A DNA stretch of 63,951 bases, filler included, from Guillardia theta CCMP2712 (GCF_000315625.1; 5 parts of 4 records of this genome joined end to end with filler, not necessarily neighbours in it); one strand, 5' to 3'. Counted from the first letter of the whole stretch, positions 1,981 through 38,312 are shown. Made by a program: numbers and translations. The notes: generated by a model from the sequence alone, not told the origin.

Positions 1981-3395
1981 ACTTTTCACGGAAAGTACCC
2001 CCACCCCCTATTTGAACCTTCCAACACCCACCCATGAGAGGTATTCGTGTGATAGTACCCCTGAAAAGTCAGGAAAGGACCCACCCCTCCTGTCTCCATG
2101 CCCAAATTGTTGACGCAATTATCAGTCTGAGGATCGAAATGTAGGAGCGGGAGGAGCAGGACCAGCTGGCGGAGCAGGAGGAGCGGCAGGAGCAGGAGGA
2201 GCAGGAGGGCAGGAGGGGCAGGAGGAGCAGGAGGAACAGGAGGGCGGGAGGGCGGGAGGAGCGGGAGCACGATAGAATGTCTGAGTGTGAGAGTAGCGAG
2301 AGTGAAAGAAATGGAACTATGAAACCAGGAATTGGCCCGAGCCTGTCGTTGATGAGCAAGAAAGTTGCGAACAAGTCCTCGAACATCGCAGTAGAGCATA
2401 GTTGCATGCTGCATGGATCACATCACATTCCTCAAGTTGGTGTTGACATGAACAATGTTGCGGAAGGAAAGATTGAAAACTTCGACTCTTTACATGACAT
2501 GAAAGCTCATCATGACAATCGATGATATGGACAATGATGTCATGCAATGACTCCTGTTCTTGTGTCGATGTTGTAGCATACATCTCAGATCTTTTCTTGA
2601 CGCGGTCCCCAGTTAGCAGCAGATGATGATGTAACTCAGTCAATCGCAGAAGGGGCATGCCGTGGCAACAAGGTTTGTAGCCCGATCGAGTACCAAGGGG
2701 AGGATGGGCTGCTGTGAGAGCAGACAAGACCCCTTCATCATCGGAGGAAGTAAGAGATGAACTCGTTTGCCTGATACCTGACTCGATGGCTGCAGGAGAA
2801 GCAAGCTACTACCAGGTCACTTGCTGCCCACCTGCTCCTTGTGTCTATCAGCTCTGTCAATCTGCAATGGGATGAAATCACTCAATGACCTCTCTCCTCC
2901 TCCTCCTCCTCCTCCTCTTCCTCCTCCTCCCATCCCTCATCTTGAGAGCTTCGAGCCATCGACTTGTTTGTGAACGGCACTGCAGTCACAGGATGCGGAT
3001 GAAAGCTCCTTCTCTGTCGTCGTTCGGGCTTCAGAGATGATCCTTGCCAGCATCGGTGAGGATTGTTCTCCTGCATGCCTCTCGCGCAACTTGCTTCTTT
3101 TTGTACCTTGTGGTCCGTCGGCTTCTTCCAGCATGCCTACTTTGCAGCACATCTGCCGTAAACATGTTGACTATCATGTTCTATCTTTCTGTTCCTTCCT
3201 TCCTTTCCTTCCTTGCTCTATCTCAGTACCTAGAGCAAGATCACTGGTGTTCAACGTATCTGATGTGCACTTCCAGGTGACGATCCAGGCCAGCAGGCAG
3301 CAACTCCTGCAATGCTGCGATCAGCTCGGCTTGCGATTCTTGAATTGGTGAGGATGCATACGACTCGTCAAAGCTTGTAAAAGTGATGGCGGTTG

Positions 3396-24241: not shown

Positions 24242-26209
24242 TTGACTCACAAGCTAGAGGAATGCGTTCACTGTCCGAACTTATCTTCTTCAGCGGTTGG
24301 GTCCGGCAGGTTGGATGAGTGTGTGTGTGAGGCTGGATACCACCGTGTTGAAGGCAGCACACCCAGCGCACCGTTCACCTGTGAGATGTGCCCAGTGGAC
24401 AGCTACTGCTTTGGGGGGGTCCTCAAGGCATGCCCCACAAACTCCTTTGCTGGACAGTTCTCGTGGTCGATCTACGACTGCACTTGCGAGGCGGGATATT
24501 ACTGGGTGGAAGGGAATGGGACTGCAGGGGAGGGATCGAGGTGCGGGGGGTGCCCTGTGGGGAGCTACTGCAACAACAGTGTGATGCAATCGTGTCCATC
24601 GAATTCGCTGTCTGTAGAGCTGTCTTCTTCGATCTCGGCTTGCGTGTGCATTAATGGGTATTACCCGGCAAACGGGGATTACACTTGTACGCTATGCCCT
24701 GCGAACAGCTACTGCAAGGATGGTATGATTATGGGGTGCCCGGCGAACAACTTCTCCCTGGCGGGGTCGTCATTGCCAACGGATTGTGCGTCGTTGAACG
24801 CATGCCAGAAAAACACCTTCTCATACACTGGGGAGAAAATCAACCTGCTGTACTCATGCGGAGATGACGAGAGATCGTTGTGTTCGAGCACGTGCAGGAT
24901 TGGGTCGGCGATGACACCTGGTTTTGAACGAAAGGGAATATGGACAGGGCCAGGATCGTCAAGCACTGATGTTCGGGGTTCGTGTGAGCATGCATTAGAA
25001 GAGCCAACGACGACAGGCTTGGTGACGCAAGAGGTATCGATTGGGTGCTACGATTGCCGAACACCGCCATTCATAATCATAGACCTTGGGGTGAGTAGAG
25101 AGATTTCTAAAGTGAATATCTGGAGTATAGACAATGGGGCGTATTGGAATCTTGCGGGAGCAGGGGAACGAGTGTTGATTGGGGACAACCCAAGCGCGCC
25201 ACCAGACTCTTGCCCACAGAGCTGGGGGTGTGTGGGTTGTTGTAACAACAACAACGGACTATGTGCCTCTGGTATCAGGTGGTCAGGGCCTAACCAGAAG
25301 AATGAGATATCTTGCAACATGAAGGGAAGATATATAACGTTGACGACGGATTGCTTGCCATGCTCGGGTGGAAACCAGCATGGGCAATGGAAAGGGGTAC
25401 TGCAATCTGCTAAGGTAGAGCTCCCGTTTTGCTACGACTGTCCGGCGAATTCGGTATCGATCCCACAGTCTACGCGTTGCACGTGCCTTCCCGGATACAT
25501 AGACGCGTTGACTGGGTTGGGGTATACGGATAATACGAAGAGCGCATGCATCCCAGACACGGCGTGTTCAGACATGCCAAACGGGGTTTGGGATCTGTCA
25601 AGTAACCAGTGTATATTATGCCCGAGTGGGTACTACAAGAGTGGTCCACTGGAATGCGTGCCATGTCCCGCAGGATATGCGCTGAATTATTCTGGAGCGA
25701 TCTCACAGTCAGAGTGCACTTCGTGTACTCCGTCATATTTCAGCGACGAAGCGGGATCTTTGATTTGCAAGGAGTGTCCTGTTGATATGTATTCGAACAT
25801 GTCGGGGACATCATGCGCGTTGTGTCCCGATGGGTCATATCTGAAAAACCCATTGCAAGGGAGCGATCAATGTGCTGCGTGCGTTCCTGGTTACTTTTGT
25901 GTGAATGGGGTGATGAAACTGTGCGCAAACCACACATACTCAAACGCATCGTCGACAGCGTGTGAATATTGCCCTGAAGGATCATATTTGAAGAATCCAT
26001 TGCAAGGGAGTGAGCAGTGCTCTATATGCGAGGCAGGGAATTACTGTAGCCTAAGCCAGAAAAGTGCATGCTTTAAGAACTCAAACTCGACAGCTGGATC
26101 TTCTTTGAAAGAGCAATGTCGATGCAACTACGGATACTACCAGAGTGAGCCAGGCGTGTGCTCTGTATGCCCGAGGAACTCTCATTGCCCTGAAACGTGC
26201 TTTGGTTGA
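24242..26209 (+). CDS. Cys-rich repeat protein (GCC2/GCC3, ephrin-receptor-like repeats) with central galactose-binding-like domain; 5' truncated by gap
   Basis: Repeated CPxNSxSxxxSxxxxxCxCxxGYY units. Central FIIIDLGVSREISKVNIW...CNMKGRYITL resembles F5/8 type C / fucolectin domains. Confidence 0.8.
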   Translation: MTHKLEECVHCPNLSSSAVGSGRLDECVCEAGYHRVEGSTPSAPFTCEMCPVDSYCFGGVLKACPTNSFAGQFSWSIYDCTCEAGYYWVEGNGTAGEGSRCGGCPVGSYCNNSVMQSCPSNSLSVELSSSISACVCINGYYPANGDYTCTLCPANSYCKDGMIMGCPANNFSLAGSSLPTDCASLNACQKNTFSYTGEKINLLYSCGDDERSLCSSTCRIGSAMTPGFERKGIWTGPGSSSTDVRGSCEHALEEPTTTGLVTQEVSIGCYDCRTPPFIIIDLGVSREISKVNIWSIDNGAYWNLAGAGERVLIGDNPSAPPDSCPQSWGCVGCCNNNNGLCASGIRWSGPNQKNEISCNMKGRYITLTTDCLPCSGGNQHGQWKGVLQSAKVELPFCYDCPANSVSIPQSTRCTCLPGYIDALTGLGYTDNTKSACIPDTACSDMPNGVWDLSSNQCILCPSGYYKSGPLECVPCPAGYALNYSGAISQSECTSCTPSYFSDEAGSLICKECPVDMYSNMSGTSCALCPDGSYLKNPLQGSDQCAACVPGYFCVNGVMKLCANHTYSNASSTACEYCPEGSYLKNPLQGSEQCSICEAGNYCSLSQKSACFKNSNSTAGSSLKEQCRCNYGYYQSEPGVCSVCPRNSHCPETCFG

Positions 26210-26303
26210 TCTTTGTGTATTTTTTGTTTTTTAAAAACAAAGTTTGCTACGGTTTGGTTTTTTCCAATAAATAAAAAAGCACTGGGAAGGGTCTACGGGA
26301 GGC

Positions 26304-26672
26304 ATGTTGGCGGCTGAGGATCTCTTGTGCTTGTCCGATGAGTTTCCACCCGATATTGAGGAGTTTGCCTCTGTGGATGCGATACAACGGAAGAGGAGGA
26401 AGATCAGCACTAACAGGAATACAGCATCAAAGTGCGAGCAGAGGTGTGGGGGATCGGAGTGCTTGTCCGATGAGTTTCCAGCCGACATTGAGGAGTTTGC
26501 CTCTGTGGATGCGATACAATGGAAGAGGAGGAAGATCAGCACTGACAGGAATACAGCATCAAAGTGCGAGCAGAGGCGGGGGGGATCGGAGTGCTTGTCC
26601 GATGAGTTTCCAACCGACATTGAGGAGTTTGCCTCTGTGGAGTTTGCCTCAGGGAATCCTTTTGTCGTATAA
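26304..26672 (+). CDS. Small ORF built from ~2.4 copies of a 132-bp (44 aa) repeat with KRRK NLS-like motif
   Basis: GTGCTTGTCCGATGAGTTTCCA recurs at 26327, 26459 and 26591. ATG at 26304. Confidence 0.45.
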   Translation: MLAAEDLLCLSDEFPPDIEEFASVDAIQRKRRKISTNRNTASKCEQRCGGSECLSDEFPADIEEFASVDAIQWKRRKISTDRNTASKCEQRRGGSECLSDEFPTDIEEFASVEFASGNPFVV

Positions 26673-26810
26673 AGGTTAAAAAGGTTTTCTATAAAGAATA
26701 TTGTTTGTATCGAGAGAATATTTCGGGCGGACTAAATTTTTATTTCTTTTTCATTTCCTCTTGAATGTAAAAACTTGACTGACAGTCAAGCATAGGACAG
26801 GAAGAGCAGC

Positions 26811-27554
26811 ATGAGCTCAGTGGTGTGTTATCACTGTGGGAGGTGGGGGCACATTGCCCCGGAGTGTTGGACGAATTCCCGTTATGCGGTCTCAGAATGG
26901 AGCGTCACCTCGAATAGAAGAACATGTTTTCAATGCGGAAAAACCGGACACTTTGCCAGCGAGTGCTATGCTAACAAGAGAAGGCGGACGGAGACTGTGG
27001 AGTGCTTCAATTGTGGGAAGCCTGGGCATTTCGCTTCAGAGTGCTTCTCACGAAAATGGGGCTCATACGAACAGCGTAATGATGAGATGGATGATGAAAA
27101 GGTCAAAAGTAGTGAGTCGAGTGAAGAAAGCGAGGATGAAGAGATAAACAAAAAGCCCATCGAGTATCCTCAACTCCTCCCCGGTACGAGCGGAGTATAC
27201 ATCTTGTTATATCCCAACGGACAGGTATACGTGGGCAGATCGAAGAACGTGGATAAACGCATTGGACAGCACTTGAAGGGACCATTCGCCGAATCATGGG
27301 GTAACCCAAAATTGATAGCCCCAGAAACCCCCGCGATACCGCATGATTTGGAGTCTTGGGAAAGGAATGAGACTTTGCACCAGATGAAGAAACACGGCAT
27401 CACAAAGGTGAGAGGGTGGAAGTATACTTCCGTTGCACTCAGCGCGGAAGAACATAGAGATGCCGCAATGCAGATACGCGAGAAATACGATCTGTGTCGT
27501 ATGTGTGGCAGCGGAACTCACTTCGCAGAGACATGTCGCTTGTCACGCGCCTGA
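26811..27554 (+). CDS. CCHC zinc-knuckle + GIY-YIG nuclease protein
   Basis: Three N-terminal CX2CX4HX4C knuckles, GVYILLYPNGQVYVGRSKNVDKRIGQH (GIY-YIG with catalytic Arg), WERNE, VRGWKY and a C-terminal knuckle CRMCGSGTHFAETC. Confidence 0.9.
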   Translation: MSSVVCYHCGRWGHIAPECWTNSRYAVSEWSVTSNRRTCFQCGKTGHFASECYANKRRRTETVECFNCGKPGHFASECFSRKWGSYEQRNDEMDDEKVKSSESSEESEDEEINKKPIEYPQLLPGTSGVYILLYPNGQVYVGRSKNVDKRIGQHLKGPFAESWGNPKLIAPETPAIPHDLESWERNETLHQMKKHGITKVRGWKYTSVALSAEEHRDAAMQIREKYDLCRMCGSGTHFAETCRLSRA

Positions 27555-27625
27555 TAGTGAACTCAGCCGCTGAGCCGCTTAACAGTGCGTTTGAATAACA
27601 CTTGTTTATTACAACAACAAGAATA

Positions 27626-27985
27626 TCACAATTTACGTCGTTTGGATTGCCTTCGTACAGAATCATCTCCATTCCCAACAACTTCCTCATTCCCTCCATC
27701 AGCCGATACGTTCGACGTCGTGCGGGCGGTGGCATCGCTGCGTGCTGCATCGGTCAACTTCCTTAACTCCTCCTCAAGTTCCCGAACTCGATCTTGCTTC
27801 ATAGTCCGAGTTATAATTTGACTGTTCTTGATCGTAGTAACAACACCACTGTTGTTAGTAGTCTCAATGATCTCCTCTCTCACCCTCTTCTTCACTCCAA
27901 GCAATGAAACTCCTGAATTGTTGTAACTCTTGTACAGATCATAGGCCATACTCGCAACACCAAAGCTAAACAACAAAGTGTTCAT
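27626..27985 (-). CDS. Small hypothetical protein (hydrophobic N-terminus, coiled coil, basic C-terminus)
   Basis: MNTLLFSFGVASMAYDLYK...DRVRELEEELRKL...RRQSKRRKL; convergent with the GIY-YIG gene. Confidence 0.5.
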   Translation of the reverse strand: MNTLLFSFGVASMAYDLYKSYNNSGVSLLGVKKRVREEIIETTNNSGVVTTIKNSQIITRTMKQDRVRELEEELRKLTDAARSDATARTTSNVSADGGNEEVVGNGDDSVRRQSKRRKL

Positions 27986-28260
27986 TTTCACACCTTGACA
28001 CTTAGGCCCTTGCTTTAAGTAACGCAGTCCGCGGCCCCTAATGACACTTAGTACCCCACACAAAGCAGGTAAAATAAGGGGTAGTCAAAGTGGGGGAATA
28101 ACCAAGAGACAAACATAGAGGGGTGGTATGATACAATAAAACAACCCGTACTGTAATCAATGACACTTCGGCTAAGATCCTTGTACCCCCAATTAAAGCC
28201 TTAATTTAAGGGGTACTCACGTATTACATTTTGTGCTGAGAAACATAACACGTAACACAT

Positions 28261-28865
28261 ATGTACCCCCTATCTGCCCTATATATTCATGTATAACCAC
28301 CGGGTACACCCAGTCCACCTGTAATAGGACGACCACCCCATGTCAGTCAGGTTCATGTACCCCCAGTACCCCCTGCCTGCTCTATATATTCATGTATAAC
28401 CACCGGGTACTCCCACCCCACCTGTAATAGGACGACCACCCTATATAACCCCAAGTACCCCCTGTCTACCCCATATCTTTATATATAACCACCGGGTACA
28501 CCCAGTCCACCTGTAATAAGACGACCACCCCATATAACCCCAGTACCCCCAATCTCCCCCATATCTTTATATATAACCACCGGGTACACCCAGCCCACCT
28601 GTAATAAGACGACCACCCCATATAACCCCAGTACCCCCAATCTCCCCCATATCTTTATATATAACCACCGGGTACACCCACCCCACCTGTAATAGGACGA
28701 CCACCCCATATAACCCCAGTACCCCCAATCTCCCCCATATCTTTATATATAACCACCGGGTACACCCACCCCACCTGGAATGACCCACCACCCCATATAA
28801 CCCCCACCACCCCCATTTCCCCCATATCTTCATATATAACCACCGGGTACTCCCACTCCACTCCA
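28261..28865. repeat. ~88-bp minisatellite, about 7 units
   Basis: Core TATAACCACCGGGTAC recurs seven times; the central units have an exact 88-nt period. C-rich/G-poor top strand. One further unit at ~30400-30466. Confidence 0.9.
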
Positions 28866-28908
28866 CATATAATAAAGGGTGGGACCTAGGAAAATCTGAG
28901 AAGTCACA

Positions 28909-29526
28909 ATGCCCATCAAACGCAAGGCACGGCGCTCCTCCATTGGCATGTCAAAGAAACCCAAAGTATCTTTGGCTCTTGTGGTATATCGACCACCTCA
29001 AATACCTCGCGAATCTGATGCAGTTGTGATATACAAACCATTTGTGGATTTCGATTATGCTCGAAGTTGCATTTTTGCACATTGGACATGTAATTTGTTT
29101 TTCAGCCGTGGGAATGGAGTCGGTGGGCGAATATTGAGCCCCAAGTACAGCAACCGTGAGACTGTTCAATGGCGACTGTATGTAATCAGACTTTTTCACA
29201 TGCTTGACCGGTTTACTATCAGGAAGCTCGTTCCATTTTTGTTGCAATCTTCTATAGATTCCGATCATGATATGCTGTGTCGCAGCTTGTTGAATTTTTT
29301 TGGTGTCAAGATTGAGTCAAATGATCACTTTGATAACTTGAAGGTTGTCGAATATGAAGCCTGGATAAGAAGGATGTTCCAACATCAAGCATTCGACAAA
29401 GTGAAGCAGACAAAGCTTCAGTATGAATCTGAAATCGACAAGATGCAACAGAAACATGCTTTAGAACTAGAGAACAAAGACAGGCTGATTGCAGCCCTTC
29501 TCAAGAGGATTCCAAAGAAATTTTGA
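28909..29526 (+). CDS. Hypothetical protein, basic N-terminus and C-terminal coiled coil
   Basis: 205-aa ATG-initiated intronless ORF ending QQKHALELENKDRLIAALLKRIPKKF, 20 nt before the TTAA at 29547. Confidence 0.65.
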   Translation: MPIKRKARRSSIGMSKKPKVSLALVVYRPPQIPRESDAVVIYKPFVDFDYARSCIFAHWTCNLFFSRGNGVGGRILSPKYSNRETVQWRLYVIRLFHMLDRFTIRKLVPFLLQSSIDSDHDMLCRSLLNFFGVKIESNDHFDNLKVVEYEAWIRRMFQHQAFDKVKQTKLQYESEIDKMQQKHALELENKDRLIAALLKRIPKKF

Positions 29527-29550
29527 GTTATTCATTAAAGATACTTTTAA

Positions 29551-29687
29551 AATCTCGTAGTCACTGCATTGAATCAATGAACCGATGACACTGTTGTTCA
29601 TACATCTGCTTTCCACATTTCCTCTGATTTCCAAGAAGAGCGAACAATTGAATGTTTCTCTTGATGACCCCCAATAGTCAGTGACTA
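29551..29687 (-). ncRNA. Putative Fanzor omegaRNA scaffold (copy 1)
   Basis: Begins at the Fanzor-remnant stop codon and ends at TTAA (29547-29550). Has 9-bp perfect complementarity between 29679-29687 and 29558-29566, a hairpin CAATAGTC-AGT-GACTATTG (29672-29690) and a stem ATGAAC/GTTCAT. The terminal 93 nt including TTAA are duplicated exactly at 30092-30184. Confidence 0.6.
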
Positions 29688-29891
29688 TTGAGGGCGATGA
29701 TACAGAGGTCTTTGCAGAAATCCAGGTCTTCGAGGAAGTGACTTGAAACAAAGTAGAATATTCATGGCTGCATTGACGTCCCGGGATACAAATGGAGACT
29801 TGAAACATCTGGTGGAAGAACACCATTTCAATCCTCGAACACACGTTTTTCGCGTGTTGTGTATCCCTTTTCTTCGCATTAAGTGTCGCAT
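29685..29891 (-). pseudogene. Fanzor (eukaryotic TnpB homolog) C-terminal remnant
   Basis: VRGLKWCSSTRC...FVSRDVNAAMNILLCFKSLPRRPGFLQR gives the second Zn-finger Cys pair, the RuvC-III RDxNAAxNI motif and the RP tail. An in-frame stop lies just upstream; RuvC-I/II are absent. Confidence 0.85.
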
Positions 29892-30091
29892 AAAATCATG
29901 TTTTGGTTCGCTGACTCAGCTTTTGAGTTTGTCGCATTCATCACTTTTTATATTTTTTTTCAAGAAAATAAAAAAACCAAACCCAAGCAAATATTAACCA
30001 CTGGAGGTACAATACTCATCACGAGTTTAGGAGACGAATTTGTGATTTTGGAATTTGGGATTCCTTGTGGAATCCTTTTGACGTATAAAGG

Positions 30092-30333
30092 TTAAAATCT
30101 CGTAGTCACTGCATTGAATCAATGAACCGATGACACTGTTGTTCATACATCTGCTTTCCACATTTCCTCTGATTTCCAAGAAGACAACCTTTTGCAACGC
30201 CGCCAGCCGCAGAAAGCGCGAATGAGAGTCAACATGTATTACCACAAAGATGAACACCCATCTACTATCCACTAAGCTCTTCCGATGAAAACCACAGAAA
30301 CAGAGTCATGAGCCTCTCGCGGGCGGGAGTTAA
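30092..30333 (-). mobile_element. Non-autonomous 234-bp TTAA-flanked element with Fanzor right end / partial omegaRNA (copy 2)
   Basis: TTAA at 30092-30095 and 30330-30333. 30092-30184 is identical to 29547-29639. Both flanks match sequences elsewhere in the island up to the TTAA. Confidence 0.7.
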
Positions 30334-30466
30334 AGCCTTAATTTAAGGGGTACTCACGTATTACATTTTGTGCTGGGAAACATAACACGTAACACATATG
30401 TACCCCCTATCTGCACTATATATTCATGTATAACCACCGGGTACTCCCACTCCACCTGTAATAGGA
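30330..30466 (+). repeat. 137-bp direct repeat of 28193-28329 starting at TTAA
   Basis: TTAAAGCCTTAATTTAAGGGGTACTCACG...CCACCTGTAATAGGA, 4 mismatches by manual comparison. Confidence 0.9.
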
Positions 30467-30536
30467 GGTTCATGAATTTGAGTCAATTTCGAATTGCTTC
30501 TATATCGGGCTTGAAGCGCTTGCGAGAATCAAAGGA

Positions 30537-30821
30537 ATGATGCAGTCCTCCACACAGAACCTCACCCTCGGCGCGGCGTACCCAAACCCGCTCACCTATG
30601 GTGACATCGACCATTATCTCAGTGCTGTCGAGTATGACACCGAGGTCTCCCCAGAGGAGTTGCATCAGCAGATCACAAAAGCCGCGCTGAGATTCGTCCG
30701 GTCTAGGAACATCCCCGTGGACTCCAAGATCTACACGAAGGCAATCACATTCATGAATTCCAACTTCTGTCACATCAAGGGGGTCGAGAACTATCTTGCA
30801 AAGTTGCTTGTTACGAAGTAG
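30537..30821 (+). CDS. Small hypothetical protein
   Basis: 94-aa ATG-initiated ORF with ordinary globular composition, convergent with the GNAT. Confidence 0.55.
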   Translation: MMQSSTQNLTLGAAYPNPLTYGDIDHYLSAVEYDTEVSPEELHQQITKAALRFVRSRNIPVDSKIYTKAITFMNSNFCHIKGVENYLAKLLVTK

Positions 30822-30847
30822 TGTGAAAATAAAAACGATTCTTTATT

Positions 30848-31366
30848 TCAAGAAAGACTCTCAACAGTCTCTACACCGCAGCTCTCCCAGAACCCGACGC
30901 TCTCGGGCAGTGGGTTCCATGCCTCCCTGATCCGGAGCTTCTGTACAAACAGGCGACCGAGCCCCTGTCTCCGCATGTCTGGCCTCACCCAGATACACTC
31001 CGCGATATCGTCTTGCATGATGCAGTAGCAGGGCAGCAGGTAATCACCGGGGTCACCGTTCATGTCCACACAGAAAAGAGGATCGAGCTTGCACCCCAGA
31101 CGAAACATCTCCTCGGTCTCGATTACCTTGAGTCCATAAAGTGTTTTCTCTTTGAAAGCATTCAGAATAGTGTTATACGGCACATTTCCTGGGCTGCCCT
31201 CAATGATCTGTCGGAAGATGATCCAGAAATCACCCTCGTCCTCAACCCTGAAAGCGGTGGCATCCCCGTAGTGTTCCTTCCACAACACACGCAACATCGC
31301 GTGTGAGATGCGATAATTCCTATGGAAGCTACACAAGCCTTCATACATCGGCCATTGTTCTTGCAT
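30848..31366 (-). CDS. GNAT-family acetyltransferase
   Basis: CIWVRPDMRRQGLGRLFV (acetyl-CoA-binding motif A, R/QxxGxG) and PLPESVGFWESCG (motif B). Confidence 0.8.
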   Translation of the reverse strand: MQEQWPMYEGLCSFHRNYRISHAMLRVLWKEHYGDATAFRVEDEGDFWIIFRQIIEGSPGNVPYNTILNAFKEKTLYGLKVIETEEMFRLGCKLDPLFCVDMNGDPGDYLLPCYCIMQDDIAECIWVRPDMRRQGLGRLFVQKLRIREAWNPLPESVGFWESCGVETVESLS

Positions 31367-31472
31367 GATGGGGTACTCAACGACTTGCCTTGAAGTTTTT
31401 TCGGGGTGGGGGGGGGGGGTATTTTTGGTACCATATACGGGTGGGGGAGGATGCTGGTAGTTGAGCTGTTTG

Positions 31473-31874
31473 TTACTTAGCCATCAAAGGAAAAATTTCT
31501 TTTATTTGCTCCAGAAGTTGATTTTTCTTCTCATTGTTAGGCTCGAATTCCAATAATGCAAGTTCAAGCAATAGTTTTATAGCTACGGAATTCCGCTGTA
31601 ATATTTGCTTATTCTTTCTCAATCTCGCATTTATCTGGTCTGAATCTGCATACTTGTAACCTGCCAAAGCGCCAATTACTGGATAAGACATTGGTGCGTA
31701 TGTAGAAATCATGTTTTTTTTATTTTCCGCTGATGTTGCATACATCAATGAACCAAGAGCTGTGCCTGCACTTATTGGAATTGCATAGTTTTTGATATTT
31801 TGCATGTATTTGTTTATATCTTGCATGTATTTGTTTATATCTTGTATATATTTGTTACACTTCGTTCTTGACAT
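31473..31874 (-). CDS. Small AT-rich putative membrane protein (paralog 1)
   Basis: Two hydrophobic Gly-containing segments. 31647-31810 is near-identical to 32046-32209. Confidence 0.6.
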   Translation of the reverse strand: MSRTKCNKYIQDINKYMQDINKYMQNIKNYAIPISAGTALGSLMYATSAENKKNMISTYAPMSYPVIGALAGYKYADSDQINARLRKNKQILQRNSVAIKLLLELALLEFEPNNEKKNQLLEQIKEIFPLMAK

Positions 31875-31889
31875 GTTGAAGGATTTTTC

Positions 31890-32204
31890 TTATTCTGAAT
31901 TTTTCATTTCATCATTATCAGGGTCTTTCAATGCATATTCCAACAGTATTTGTATAGCTAGTGAATTGCTGTCTAATTGTGCATCCAAACGATCCTCTAG
32001 GATCTTAAAATTCACATCATGTAATCTCTGTTCTATCATATCATTTGCATACTTGTAACCTGCCAAAGCGCCAATTACTGGATAAGACATTGGTGCGTAT
32101 GTAGAAATCATGTTTTTTTTATTTCCCGCTGATGTTGCATACATCAATGAACCAAGAGCTGTGCCTGCACTTATTGGAATTGCATAGTTTTTGATATTTT
32201 GCAT
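31890..32204 (-). CDS. Small AT-rich putative membrane protein (paralog 2)
   Basis: Shares MQNIKNYAIPISAGTALGSLMYATSA...GALAGYKYA with the adjacent ORF; the C-terminus has diverged. Confidence 0.6.
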   Translation of the reverse strand: MQNIKNYAIPISAGTALGSLMYATSAGNKKNMISTYAPMSYPVIGALAGYKYANDMIEQRLHDVNFKILEDRLDAQLDSNSLAIQILLEYALKDPDNDEMKNSE

Positions 32205-32256
32205 GTATTGTTTTGTGATATCAAACTAATGGACTTATTTATATAGTTTGTTTGAA

Positions 32257-36136: not shown

Positions 36137-36810
36137 TTATGTCACTTCTTTCAATGCATCCTCCAACTCCAATATCTGAATGATTTTGATGATTTTTACG
36201 ATGATTTCCACCGTTCCGCAACCATGAAACTCGAACAAAACCGACTCACCAATCCCGAGGTCGTTCACAGCGTGATAATAGCTGAACTTCCGTGTATCAT
36301 ACTCTTTTTTGGTCATCACGTGGCAATACACCCCCCCTTCGTGCGAGCAGAGAACGGCGTCGTAGTTCTTGAACGCAGGCCTGAACAAACCCAAGATGTG
36401 TGAGTTGTTGTACTCTGCTTCGGAGTTGATCTCGGCATTGAAATTCAGCCGCAAATGATCCCTCTGGTCGTGTTCGCCGTCGTCTTCAATTGACACCGAA
36501 AACAGCCCAAGCTTTTTCCTCACTAGATACTCCAGTTGTGTTTCATATTTCGATGACAAATTCTCGATGCATCTCTTTCGCTCTGCGTCCAATACAGGCT
36601 GCATGCTTTGGCTTTCTGGGGGTGGCGCGTGGTGTACATTCATGTACTTTCGTTTTTTTTCTTTACGGAAGAACTCGAAGCAGACGCCTGGGTTGAGGTG
36701 AATGAGGCAGATGGAGAGGACGACTTTGACGTTCCAGGGCTGGTCTTGTTTTTGCTGGTGCTGCTGGTGCTGCTGCTGTTGTTGTTGTTGCTGCTGTTGT
36801 TGCTGCTGCT

Positions 36811-36844
<34 letters not shown>

Positions 36845-37507
36845 CTGTTGTTGCTGCTGCTGTTGTTGTTGTTGCTGCTGCTGCTGCTGCTTCTGCTGTT
36901 TCAGGAGCCGCCTCTGCTGTTTTTTGGTTTTGTGCTTGTGTTCGTGCTTTGGTTGCTGCTTTGGTTCCTGCTTTGGTTGCTGCTTTGGTTCGTGCTTTGG
37001 TTCGTGCTTTGGTTCGTGCTTTGGTTCCTGGTTTGGGGTTGGGAGCTGCTGCTGCGTGGGGGCTTGAGTCTTGGAGCGCTTTGTTTGCCTGGGAGGGTAG
37101 TGGGAGTCGCAGTTGATCTCAGCGGCCTTGATGACGTAGCGGAGCATGACGAAGAACTTCTTTGAGCAGTCCAAGAGGGGCTTCTGGTAGATTTTTGTGA
37201 GGGCCTGGTCTTCGGAGAGGGCAGAGAATTCGTGGTCCATGATTCCGAAGGCCTTGAACTTTCGGGAGTTTGCGATGAGGCCCTTGTCTGTGGATTTGAA
37301 TTGTTTTGGGGTGAGAATTGTTTTTGGGAGATGGAAGAGGGGTTGACCTTGGACGACGACGCGGAAGAATCGCTTGAGGATCCTGGAGGCGGCGGCGGGG
37401 AGGAGGAGTGAGGGTTTGGGGGGGAGGGTGCACCTGGACCTGCGAGGGGTGAGAGGGGATTTTGGGGACTTTATGGTGTGGGGCACCTGTGGAGGCTGTA
37501 GCAGCAT
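36137..37507 (-). CDS. Hypothetical protein with poly-Q tract and EPKH repeats
   Basis: 456-aa ORF with a mixed CAG/CAA poly-Q. Its start overlaps the end of the lipase-like gene. Confidence 0.6.
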
Positions 37508-38312
37508 CGCCTGTAGTAGTTCCTGTCGTGGAGGGAGAGGTCATCGTGCGGGGGGGAGGGGGTGTCTTCTGCGTTATCGAGGAAGATGGGGGGCTTATCT
37601 TCCCAGAGGGAGTCAGGGTTGGACCTTGGGGTGATATTTCTGCAGTATGGACCGAGCATGTCGCCCTTGGCGTGGAAGGAGAACTGGAAGGGGAGGATGT
37701 TGTTGTACCACTGAGCGAACATCTTGTTTCCTGGGGGCATTTTTCCGAAGGAGATGAGGTTGAAGCCAGGGTTCCTGAGGGGGAGAGTGAGTTTTTGTGT
37801 TTGGGGCAAGGAGAGGGGTGTGACCTGGGGATGAAGAGGGCGAGGAGCTGTGCGAGCACGGCGGCGAACTCCCAACCGGTGAGGGTGAGAGATTGATCGG
37901 GGGGGAGGGAGTGTATGTAGCGGAGGAGGTCCTGGAAAGCGGGGGTGGGGAGGATTGCGTGGAGCTCGCGGAGGGAGTTAGCGATTGCCTTTGCGCCTTG
38001 GGGGGGCTTGGGGAGGCTGGGGAGGAGGTCCTGTGGGAGGAATGGGTGAGTGAGTTTGGCTTGGGGGTTTTGGGAGGGGTTTGGGGAGGAGGTGGAGACC
38101 TGATTGACGGGGGCGAGGGAGAAATCCCAGGGCGAGGGGTTGAACTCGAGTGCGATGACGGAGGATCCGGAGGGCAAGCGATAGGCGCGAGCAGTTGAGT
38201 TTGGGAAGGTCCACAGAGTGGAGGGGATGGCAGTGAGTACGGGGGAGGGTGGGGAGCCGTGCTGTTCGAGCGCGGCGAGTCCTGCGATTCCGATCAAGCT
38301 CTTGGAGAGCAT
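37471..38312 (-). CDS. Class-3 lipase-like protein, predicted inactive; two exons (38312-37825, 37774-37471), 263 aa
   Basis: SLTLTGWEFAAVLAQL aligns to (V)TGHSLGGALA with the catalytic Ser lost. Removing a 50-nt GT...ACTCAC...CAG intron joins in frame to LISFGKMPPGNKMFAQWYN (TFGxPxxGN motif) and FHAKGDML. Confidence 0.65.

What the first reader, a model, noticed from the sequence alone, without database searches (positions are those of the whole stretch)
26653..30466. TTAA-joined cassette array: one insertion site, two copies, two different nuclease-related cargos
Seen in sequence: three independent repeat pairs break at TTAA. (a) GGAATCCTTTTG[T/A]CGTATAAAGG-TTAA at 26653-26679 and 30069-30095; identity ends two A's past TTAA. 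(b) The 93-nt Fanzor end starting at TTAA 29547 and 30092. (c) A 137-nt repeat starting at TTAA 28193 and 30330. The same site, L-TTAA-R, therefore occurs twice: filled once by 1513 bp (26680-28192, zinc-knuckle GIY-YIG gene plus one ORF) and once by 234 bp (30096-30329, Fanzor right end). Neither insert has terminal inverted repeats, which argues against piggyBac. Inference: an integron-like or nested array of TIR-less modules exchanged at a TTAA core by a recombinase acting in trans (tyrosine, serine or HUH type; none is encoded here). A protein-only homing nuclease and an RNA-guided system would then occupy equivalent sites.
Basis: partly seen in the sequence, partly recalled or inferred. 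Interest (0 to 1): 0.9.

Follow-up and report, generated by a model that had tools for sequence, protein, structure and literature searches.

The report
Fanzor transposon inserted at TTAA
What looked like an integron-style array of cassettes joined at TTAA is mostly a truncated Fanzor-carrying transposon with inverted ends. It sits in a TTAA site of a duplicated region of the alga Guillardia theta, which is an ordinary kind of mobile element, though a filled and an empty copy of the site coexist.

Summary
The three repeat pairs and their TTAA boundaries are in the assembled sequence as described, but the cassette-array reading does not hold.

- **Source.** The piece is the whole 14,292-bp scaffold JH993323.1 of Guillardia theta CCMP2712.
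- **Fanzor remnant.** The minus strand of 29688-29915 encodes the C-terminal end of a Fanzor/TnpB nuclease (…SRDVNAAMNIL…; E 1.3e-14 to a 598-aa Hanusia phi protein).
- **Motif L is a transposon end.** L is the terminal repeat of this Fanzor element, not part of a target site. Read contigs give the element's other end as TTAA|CCTATAAACGACAAAC, the inverse of L.
- **Empty site.** Read contigs with piece-type flanks lack the element and keep a single TTAA. A 98% paralogous locus also lacks it. TTAA is also the published TAM of G. theta Fanzor1.
- **93-nt repeat.** Its first copy is not supported by two read sets and is probably an assembly chimera.
- **GIY-YIG gene.** It is present in every copy seen and no empty site was found.
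- **Still unexplained.** Both copies of repeat R start at TTAA, and a 154-bp stretch directly after a TTAA is missing in a metagenomic relative.

Fanzor genes inside TIR DNA transposons, piggyBac included, are already on record, so this is a new member of a known kind.

The parts
26653..26675 (-). L1: solitary 23-nt terminal repeat of the Fanzor-element family (read on the minus strand: CCTTTATACGACAAAAGGATTCC), abutting TTAA 26676-26679
   Evidence: It matches the read-derived opposite end in 17 of 19 positions, TTAA included. No partner repeat lies beside any other TTAA of the piece. It is also present in paralog L002.
26680..28192 (.). Segment between two TTAA sites holding the GIY-YIG gene with three CCHC zinc knuckles (26811-27554, +) and an unknown 145-aa ORF (27626-28063, -). 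No sign that it is mobile.
   Evidence: Pfam zf-CCHC 5.2e-16 and GIY-YIG 6.5e-7. One contig spans 26583-28222 in both X1 and X2. It is present in L002 at 98% and in X6. Homologues occur only in metagenomes, at 51% identity or less, with no shared neighbours.
28193..28861 (+). R1 (28193-28329, starting TTAAAGCCTTAATTTAA) running into a minisatellite of seven roughly 88-nt units with TATA-like motifs, upstream of the ORF at 28909
   Evidence: families D2, D3, D5. Copy number differs in L002.
28909..29526 (+). 205-aa ORF of unknown function. The annotated model GUITHDRAFT_143236 covers part of it.
29547..29550 (.). TTAA target. It is the left flank of the Fanzor element in + coordinates, which is the side of the element's 3' end.
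29551..29635 (.). The part of the first 93-nt copy that exists only in the assembly. Read contigs carry the element's true end here instead (TTAA|CCTATAAACGACAAACTGAAATAGACA … CCCACC|AAGAGCGAAC). Probably a chimera of the filled and empty forms.
   Evidence: X1 loose ends at 29550 and 29636; X2 joint 29550>29636; X1 record 7 and X2 record 15 do not branch. (none listed, 2 words).
29636..30091 (-). Truncated Fanzor element. It holds the Fanzor C-terminal remnant (29915-29688), a 13-bp RNA hairpin just past its stop codon, a 195-nt 5'-end region (29897-30091) with a 7-bp subterminal hairpin, and the terminal repeat L2 (30069-30091).
   Evidence: Fanzor identity. (hairpins). (absent from L002). 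(extra depth and variant contigs over 29620-29835; other copies continue past 29899 into more ORF).
30092..30095 (.). TTAA, the second flank of the element (target-site duplication)
30096..30249 (.). 154-bp stretch, the real copy of the 93-nt sequence plus 65 nt. It lies directly after the TTAA and is absent from the metagenomic relative X6. It has no TIR, no duplication and no notable fold. Its origin is open.
   Evidence: X6 joint 29550>30250. (present in L002 with an 18-nt deletion and TCAA instead of TTAA). (z +0.9).
30330..30474 (+). R2: second copy of R (TTAA, a leader and one minisatellite unit), 63 nt upstream of the ORF at 30537-30821
   Evidence: Present in L002.

Best explanation
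The region is ordinary nuclear DNA of Guillardia theta that exists in at least two near-identical copies. A cut-and-paste DNA transposon carrying a Fanzor (TnpB-like, RNA-guided nuclease) gene has inserted into one copy.

The element lies on the minus strand between the TTAA sites at 29547 and 30092. Its ends are imperfect inverted repeats (CCTTTATACGTCAAAAGG… and CCTATAAACGACAAACTG…), and the TTAA target is duplicated on both sides, as in piggyBac- or Kolobok-type elements. The assembled copy keeps only the last 76 codons of Fanzor.

Motif L is this family's terminal repeat. L1 at 26653 is a leftover end of an older insertion. The '93-nt repeat' is simply the DNA next to the target TTAA. It appears twice because the assembly mixed the empty and the filled form.

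TTAA is also the motif (TAM) that G. theta Fanzor1 needs next to its target. The nuclease of such an element would therefore be set to cut the empty site and favour re-copying of the element; this step is inferred, not shown.

The GIY-YIG gene is a resident neighbour, not a cassette. The two R copies are duplicated promoter-like leaders of a minisatellite. Why they start exactly at TTAA is not explained.
For: - **Source and paralog.** The piece is scaffold JH993323.1 of GCA_000315625.1, and a protein on it is named Guillardia theta CCMP2712. The 458-kb scaffold JH993036.1 (L002) matches 24255-29576 and 30141-31461 at about 98% but lacks 545 bp there.
- **Fanzor remnant.** The minus strand of 29688-29915 reads …VRGLKWCSSTRCFKSPFVSRDVNAAMNIL…. 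phmmer gives E 1.3e-14 and 71% identity to the C-terminus of P0047, a 598-aa Hanusia phi protein. P0047 and other hits carry Pfam Cas12f1-like_TNB. tblastx to the Fanzor homologue in L047 gives 55% over 65 aa.
- **Empty site.** X2 record 15 joins 29521-29546, TTAA and 30096-30359 with no mismatch over the 268 letters laid on 30092-30359. X1 record 7 passes 30184 without a branch.
- **Other end of the element.** In X1, 29550 is followed by CCTATAAACGACAAACTGAAATAGACA. X2 has one contig linking 29550 to 29636 through other letters. This end matches the reverse complement of L1 in 17 of 19 positions, TTAA included. My binomial estimate puts that at about 1e-5 by chance.
- **Multi-copy family.** Depth rises over 29620-29810, and variant contigs cover 29688-29835. 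In other copies the ORF continues beyond 29899, and the 5'-end region is preceded by a sequence encoding MPRKRKE, which looks like an N-terminus (P0047 begins MSKKRKAPD).
- **TAM.** TTAA(N) is the TAM of GtFz1 (PMC10432273, PMC11423790).
- **Literature.** A 2026 review states that the 5' duplication forms part of the TAM and that Repbase lists Fanzor in piggyBac elements (PMC13565253).
- **RNA fold.** A structured RNA is predicted just past the Fanzor stop codon (z -2.9).
Against: - No transposase was found, so the superfamily is not assigned.
- With a single filled/empty pair, a TA duplication with ends ACC…GGT (Tc1/mariner or IS630 type) fits the same letters as a TTAA duplication.
- The inverted end rests on Logan contigs (one loose end in X1, one joint in X2), not on raw reads. 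Its full sequence is unknown.
- X1's copy of 29897-30091 differs from the window by 6 substitutions and 5 gaps at depth 107 against about 266 for the flanks. It may therefore come from another locus.
- X1's contig ends at 30091, which hints that not every copy is followed by T.
- The published G. theta Fanzor loci do not contain this terminal repeat or the 93-nt sequence, and their authors saw no inverted repeats.
- L1 has no partner end.
- The TTAA start of both R copies, and the 154 bp missing in X6 directly after TTAA, are not explained by this model.
Confidence: 0.6

Rival explanations
1. The element is the same Fanzor-carrying TIR transposon but belongs to the Tc1/mariner/IS630 kind. On this reading the duplicated target is TA, the ends are ACCTTTATACG… and …CGTATAAAGGT, and the TTAA look comes from a T-TA-A target context.
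For: The filled and empty sequences fit TA and TTAA equally well. In the published GtFz1 locus, the ORF just upstream of Fanzor reads by eye like a Tc1/mariner DDE transposase (…PPYSPRCNPIEEVFS…), and shared homology starts right after a TTAA (not verified with a tool).
Against: All three known ends (L1, L2 and the read-derived end) sit in a full TTAA. Under a TA target, the outer T and A would have to arise by chance at two independent sites, which I estimate at roughly 1 in 40. Termini starting CCT/CCC next to TTAA are typical of piggyBac-like elements (my knowledge). A multi-copy element end TTAA|CCTTTAAACGACAAATTAAATCCC turned up in one metagenome, but the search pattern itself forced the TTAA.
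Confidence: 0.15
2. One reading: an integron-like array of TIR-less modules exchanged at a TTAA core by a recombinase acting in trans, with the GIY-YIG segment and the Fanzor end as alternative cargos of one site.
For: Five repeat boundaries fall on TTAA although TTAA is rare in the piece. The metagenomic relative X6 shows another neighbourhood for R: R after the GIY-YIG segment is followed by unique sequence, and R after 30250-30329 is followed by the minisatellite.
Against: L is a transposon end with an inverted partner. L2 is absent from the paralog, so the 'site' is not repeated. No recombinase is encoded in the piece or in the 20 kb of L002. The GIY-YIG segment shows no empty site in any source. 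The differences in X6 lie within or after R, which fits ordinary homologous exchange between R copies.
Confidence: 0.04
3. Some of the TTAA-bounded pieces without inverted ends are insertions made directly 3' of TTAA without duplication, as IS200/IS605 elements insert. The candidates are the 154 bp at 30096-30249 and possibly R and the GIY-YIG segment. They could also be products of repair after Fanzor cuts next to its TTAA motif.
For: X6 joins TTAA (29547-29550) directly to 30250, so the 154 bp begin exactly after TTAA and carry no duplication. The published GtFz1-type region also begins right after a TTAA and lacks inverted repeats. The Fanzor element's 5' end has a subterminal hairpin (z -2.7).
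Against: Neither the 154 bp nor the 93 nt fold better than shuffles (z +0.9 and +1.2). No HUH transposase is present. A simple deletion in X6 explains the joint equally well. X6 is a low-depth metagenome contig set.
Confidence: 0.1
4. Nothing here is mobile. The pattern comes from segmental duplication plus assembly error in a small unplaced scaffold, and the TTAA coincidences reflect AT-rich intergenic sequence.
For: The scaffold shares 7.2 kb with a main scaffold and then diverges. Reads show a third continuation at 31456. At least two internal junctions of the assembled element (29639|29640 and 29896|29897) are not seen in X1.
Against: The Fanzor remnant is real and multi-copy. The insertion is bounded by TTAA on both sides with inverted ends, and the read-derived empty form has exactly one TTAA. 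With TTAA at about 0.2% of positions, chance is very unlikely.
Confidence: 0.08

Closest known systems
Fanzor1-carrying TIR DNA transposons (Bao and Jurka 2013, PMC3627910; Repbase lists piggyBac among the carriers according to PMC13565253)
   Same: A Fanzor1-type gene inside an element with short imperfect terminal inverted repeats and a fixed AT-rich target duplication. The copy seen here has no transposase inside it. A structured RNA is predicted at the 3' end of the gene.
   Different: The carrier superfamily is not established here because no transposase was seen. The assembled copy is a stub holding the last 76 codons. A filled and an empty form coexist in the read sets of one organism.
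GtFz1 of Guillardia theta (Saito et al. 2023, PMC10432273; Xu et al. 2024, PMC11423790)
   Same: Same organism. Its TAM, 5'-TTAA, equals the sequence that flanks the element here.
   Different: A different Fanzor family: the closest relative of the remnant is a Hanusia phi protein. Neither the terminal repeat nor the 93-nt sequence occurs in the published G. theta Fanzor loci. Those loci were reported to lack inverted repeats and any transposase link. The remnant keeps D in RDVNAA, whereas GtFz1 has N at its third catalytic position.
piggyBac and Kolobok superfamilies
   Same: TTAA target duplicated on both sides, short inverted termini starting CC…, and an empty form with a single intact TTAA.
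   Different: No DDE transposase of either family was found in the sequences available. A TA duplication cannot be excluded.
IS200/IS605 with TnpB
   Same: A TnpB-family nuclease whose target-adjacent motif equals the element's target sequence. A subterminal hairpin sits at the 5' end.
   Different: The element here has inverted ends and TTAA on both sides, and no HUH transposase. It lies in a eukaryotic nuclear genome.
Integron gene cassettes
   Same: Only a superficial likeness: short conserved motifs at the joints between unrelated segments.
   Different: No integrase and no attC-like structured sites. The conserved motif is a transposon end, and the supposed site is not repeated in the paralog.

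Membership tests
Fanzor / TnpB nuclease | C-terminal RuvC-III motif (RD-x-N-A-A-x-N-I) preceded by a zinc-ribbon (TNB) region | tested here: met
   …CVRGLKWCSSTRCFKSPFVSRDVNAAMNIL… on the minus strand of 29688-29915. E 1.3e-14 to the C-terminus of P0047. P0047 and other hits carry PF07282. The fragment alone reaches only E 0.11 for PF07282.
Fanzor / TnpB nuclease | Complete protein with all three RuvC catalytic residues | tested here: not met
   Only 76 codons remain, bounded by a stop codon at 29918-29916. Read contigs continue the ORF beyond 29899 in other copies. The copy in the window is therefore a remnant.
Fanzor / TnpB nuclease | omega-RNA encoded at the 3' end, with its guide in the flank | tested here: inconclusive
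   A 13-bp hairpin is predicted just past the stop codon (z -2.9). There is no RNA evidence: X16 gave only 28 reads, and Rfam found nothing.
piggyBac / Kolobok-type cut-and-paste transposon | TTAA target-site duplication | tested here: inconclusive
   The filled form has TTAA on both sides and the read-derived empty form has one TTAA. The same letters also fit a TA duplication. L002 also lacks the element, but reads TCAA at the site.
piggyBac / Kolobok-type cut-and-paste transposon | Terminal inverted repeats | tested here: met
   The read-derived end TTAACCTATAAACGACAAA matches the reverse complement of L1 in 17 of 19 positions, and matches L2 in 14 of the 19 positions that follow TTAA (by eye). 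This rests on contigs, not raw reads.
piggyBac / Kolobok-type cut-and-paste transposon | Cognate DDE transposase in the genome | not testable with these tools
   None is encoded in the piece or in L002. The G. theta genome could not be searched as a whole.
Integron-like cassette array | The same attachment site repeated between cassettes, with a site-specific recombinase | tested here: not met
   L2 belongs to the insertion and is absent from L002. No recombinase domain turned up in the ten ORFs of the piece scanned with Pfam or among the gene calls of L002.
IS200/IS605-type element | No inverted ends, no duplication, subterminal hairpins at both ends, HUH transposase | tested here: not met
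   The ends are inverted and TTAA lies on both sides. A hairpin is seen only at the 5' end. No HUH gene is present.
GIY-YIG homing endonuclease (mobile) | GIY-YIG catalytic domain | tested here: met
   PF01541 at E 6.5e-7, plus three CCHC knuckles.
GIY-YIG homing endonuclease (mobile) | Presence/absence polymorphism at a defined site | tested here: not met
   The segment is present in the piece, in L002 and in X6. Homologues lie in unrelated contexts but give no empty site.

The most novel reading that the evidence does not exclude
In a culturable alga, a Fanzor element whose flanking duplication (TTAA) equals the nuclease's TAM coexists with its own empty site. RNA-guided 'restorative homing' of a eukaryotic cut-and-paste transposon could then be happening now. 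The other TTAA-bounded pieces without inverted ends (the 154 bp after TTAA, the starts of R, the GIY-YIG segment) would be by-products of Fanzor cuts at TTAA and their repair, or of a duplication-free way of inserting 3' of TTAA.
Probability: 0.1. Interest if true: 0.8.

Novelty: new member of a known kind. Interest (0 to 1): 0.4.

Why it matters
What Fanzor nucleases do for their host elements in eukaryotes is still unsettled. The authors who characterised the G. theta enzyme reported no inverted repeats and no transposase link at its loci.

Here a second G. theta Fanzor family shows inverted ends and TTAA flanks. TTAA is also the motif the characterised G. theta enzyme needs. Read contigs also support both a filled and an empty form of one site. 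That gives a concrete natural substrate on which to test whether the nuclease cuts the empty site.

The finding also flags a probable local mis-assembly in an unplaced scaffold of the reference genome. It is not a new kind of system.

Tried and rejected
- **Viral or phage origin.** megablast against phage records found nothing. Exact scans of IMG/VR with the 93-nt and R starts found nothing. The piece is a G. theta scaffold.
- **Exact look-ups.** The GIY-YIG protein and P0047 are not on record.
- **Published G. theta Fanzor loci.** I scanned Saito et al.'s Supplementary Data 3 with staggered 8-mers. Neither orientation of the 93-nt sequence and neither orientation of the terminal repeat is there, with about 90% of sequence phases covered for one orientation of L.
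- **R as a Fanzor target.** R's first 8 nt match the native GtFz1 guide in 7 positions, but the published flank does not resemble R further, so I dropped this.
- **Metagenome scan for the terminal repeat.** There were 36 hits, about what I estimate chance would give. The exception is one multi-copy element end in a single sample. No contig held both ends. The two IMG/VR hits look like chance.
- **Relatives of the Fanzor.** L045, L046 and L047 gave no usable ends: no clear flanking inverted repeats in L046 or L047, and L045 is too AT-rich to read TTAA boundaries. L004-L006 are freshwater giant-virus-like contigs and say nothing about this element.
- **Full-length copy in G. theta.** The last protein search, with P0047, returned no protein named as G. 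theta.
- **RNA families.** Rfam found nothing.
- **Left open.** The whole G. theta genome could not be searched, so I could not tabulate the flanks of all copies or look for a transposase.

Full report
**What the piece is.** The 14,292 bases given to me are the entire scaffold JH993323.1 of assembly GCA_000315625.1. A protein encoded on it is named 'Guillardia theta CCMP2712' by NCBI. The gene model in question lies on two scaffolds. A locus on the 458-kb scaffold JH993036.1 (L002) aligns to 24255-29576 and 30141-31461 of the window at about 98%, then diverges completely. Downstream, L002 carries ordinary nuclear genes such as IspF, kinases and SUI1. Read contigs show a third continuation at 31456 that matches neither locus. 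The region is therefore a recent segmental duplication, or a diverged allele, in a cryptophyte nuclear genome. It is not a virus.

**Check of the observation.** The three repeat pairs are present as described.
- L: 26 of 27 identical; 0 of 100 shuffles reach two matches.
- The 93-nt pair: 100% identical.
- R: 97% over 137 nt.
- TTAA occurs 29 times in the piece, about 0.2% of positions, so boundaries that fall exactly on TTAA are not chance.
- The arithmetic of the two 'inserts' (1513 and 234 bp) is right.

**What lies between the TTAA sites at 29547 and 30092.** Translating the minus strand shows …VRGLKWCSSTRCFKSPFVSRDVNAAMNILLCFK… followed by a stop codon at 29687-29685.
- A phmmer search of 1.84 billion representatives with this 76-residue piece returned 67 hits. 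Many of them match it with the C-terminal end of a 550-700-residue protein. The best is P0047 (E 1.3e-14, 71% identity, residues 550-598 of 598), a transcriptome protein of Hanusia phi, a cryptophyte.
- P0047 and further hits carry Pfam Cas12f1-like_TNB, the TnpB/Fanzor zinc-ribbon. The fragment alone scores only E 0.11 for that family.
- A metagenomic homologue (L047) aligns at 55% over 65 residues to 29900-29706.
- So 29688-29915 is the 3' stub of a Fanzor1-type gene.
- RNA folding of the stretch around the stop codon predicts a 13-bp hairpin (z -2.9). That is where an omega-RNA scaffold would begin.

**L is the end of that element.**
- L2 (30069-30091) lies 195 nt from the break in the Fanzor ORF and directly abuts TTAA.
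- In the read contigs of X1, the TTAA at 29547-29550 is followed by CCTATAAACGACAAACTGAAATAGACA, not by the 93-nt sequence. Position 29636 is preceded by …GTATGTACCCCCATCGGGAGCATACCCACC.
- X2 has one contig that links 29550 to 29636 through other letters.
- The new end is the inverse of L. Including TTAA it matches the reverse complement of L1 in 17 of 19 positions. I estimate about 1e-5 for that by chance.
- The element therefore has imperfect terminal inverted repeats and TTAA on both sides.
- The 5'-end region also carries a 7-bp subterminal hairpin (z -2.7).

**The empty site.**
- X2 contains a contig that runs from 29521 through TTAA and the 93-nt sequence straight on to 30359, with no mismatch over the 268 letters laid on 30092-30359. 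X1's contig 30092-30359 does not branch at 30184. A form with piece-type flanks, one TTAA and no element therefore exists beside the filled form.
- L002 also lacks the 545 bp. It reads TCAA instead of TTAA at the site and has an 18-nt deletion in the 93-nt sequence, so it is a different copy.
- In X1, the 5'-end region of the element has depth 107 against about 266 for the flanks. That fits presence in roughly one of two copies or alleles.

**The first 93-nt copy is doubtful.**
- If the scaffold were right, the 93-nt sequence would have two successors (29640 and 30185), and the read contigs would break at its end. They do not break in either run.
- No indexed run was listed for the words spanning 29639|29640, but only two words were sampled.
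- The break of the Fanzor ORF at 29896|29897 is not seen in X1 either. There the ORF continues (…QNAIVVEKDY… when read on the minus strand), and the 5'-end region is preceded by a sequence encoding MPRKRKE, which resembles the start of P0047.
- I conclude that 29551-29635 is probably a consensus of the empty and the filled form.
- A longer, perhaps full-length, copy of the element exists in the genome, possibly at this very site. This is inference from contigs and needs long reads.

- Pairs (a) and (b) record one event: a transposon end plus a duplicated TTAA next to the 93-nt flank.
- L2 is not part of an ancestral 'site', because the paralog has L1 but not L2.
- L1 is a solitary 23-nt end. 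None of the other 28 TTAA sites of the piece has a matching partner beside it, and nothing beyond the 23 nt resembles the element. I take it for a relic of an older insertion.
- The GIY-YIG segment is contiguous with its flanks in one contig in both X1 and X2 (26583-28222). It is present in L002 and in the metagenomic relative X6.
- Its protein has three CCHC knuckles and a GIY-YIG domain. Its relatives occur only in metagenomes, at 51% identity or less, in contexts that share no neighbours.
- Nothing shows that it moved here.

**Link with what is known.**
- GtFz1, the characterised Fanzor1 of this alga, needs 5'-TTAA(N) next to its target (PMC10432273, PMC11423790).
- A 2026 review states that TTAA is the strict duplication of piggyBac and Kolobok elements. 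It also says that the 5' duplication forms part of the TAM, that the 3' duplication lies inside the omega-RNA scaffold, and that Repbase lists Fanzor in piggyBac elements (PMC13565253).
- In the element's own orientation, the empty site here reads TTAA followed by AAGTATCTTTAATG…. That is exactly the sequence that follows the element's 3' duplication. The geometry for guided cutting of the empty site is therefore present, but cutting itself is inferred.
- The published G. theta Fanzor loci contain neither this terminal repeat nor the 93-nt sequence, and their authors saw no inverted repeats. This is therefore another family in the same genome.

**What stays open.**
- *Superfamily.* No transposase was seen, and a TA duplication with ends ACC…GGT fits the one filled/empty pair as well as TTAA does. 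I favour TTAA because all three known ends sit in a full TTAA.
- *R.* Both copies start exactly at the first of three clustered TTAA sites (TTAAAGCCTTAATTTAA) but have different left neighbours. R consists of a leader plus one unit of the 88-nt minisatellite, which carries TATA-like motifs. Each R lies 50-60 nt upstream of an ORF, so I read it as a duplicated promoter-like region. That does not explain its TTAA edge.
- *R in X6.* In X6 the R after the GIY-YIG segment is followed by unique sequence, and the R after 30250-30329 by the minisatellite. Ordinary exchange between R copies would explain this.
- *The 154 bp.* X6 joins the TTAA at 29547-29550 directly to 30250, so 154 bp that begin right after TTAA are missing there, with no duplication and no inverted ends. 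These 154 bp fold no better than shuffles. A deletion in X6 and a duplication-free insertion 3' of TTAA both remain possible.

**Verdict.** The integron-like reading is not supported. The best-supported explanation is a truncated Fanzor-carrying TIR transposon in a TTAA site of a duplicated region, with a coexisting empty site. That makes it a new member of a known kind, of moderate interest as a natural test case for the role of Fanzor.

Noticed in passing
window 24255-31461 and L002:5401-11988: About 7.2 kb of this small unplaced scaffold is a 98% copy of part of the 458-kb scaffold JH993036.1, and homology stops abruptly at 31461. Read contigs give a third continuation there (CATTTGTACCGCACGG…). 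The scaffold may be an alternative haplotype, a recent segmental duplicate or partly chimeric.
   Followed up: partly
window 26327-26650: Three tandem 132-nt units make up almost all of a 122-aa ORF (26304-26672), which is an annotated gene model. Its stop codon lies inside the transposon end L1.
   Followed up: no
window 28244-28861: A C-rich minisatellite of seven roughly 88-nt units, each with a TATATA-like motif, lies directly upstream of the ORF at 28909. Copy number differs between the two paralogous loci, and read depth is 2-3.5 times that of the flanks, so the unit occurs elsewhere in the genome.
   Followed up: partly
window 31644-31815 and 32043-32214: A 172-nt direct repeat at 98% identity lies within two adjacent minus-strand ORFs (31473-31874 and 31890-32204) that are paralogues of each other. 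This looks like a young tandem gene duplication.
   Followed up: no
window 36709-36999: A long CTG/TTG (poly-Q on the minus strand) repeat sits inside the 456-aa ORF at 36137-37507. That ORF overlaps a second, proline-rich ORF (37119-38312) on the same strand in another frame.
   Followed up: no
L009-L011, L013, L014, L022, L033, L035, L036, L038, L042, L043: In one metagenome sample and two related ones, a multi-copy element end TTAA|CCTTTAAACGACAAATTAAATCCC… sits at contig ends with a different flank each time. It looks like a piggyBac-type transposon of some eukaryote, with a terminus close to the one found here.
   Followed up: partly
Supplementary Data 3 of PMC10432273 (GtFz1 locus, local positions about 2050-3110): The ORF just upstream of GtFz1 reads by eye like a Tc1/mariner/IS630 DDE transposase (…DNVAFHRS…PPYSPRCNPIEEVFS…). 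In a second locus the annotated region starts right after a TTAA. The paper reports no transposase association. I did not verify this with a tool.
   Followed up: no
L048 and L047 (both from sample ERZ930071): The closest GIY-YIG/zinc-knuckle homologue (51% identity) and a full-length Fanzor homologue of the same family come from the same metagenome. A related organism may therefore carry both genes.
   Followed up: no
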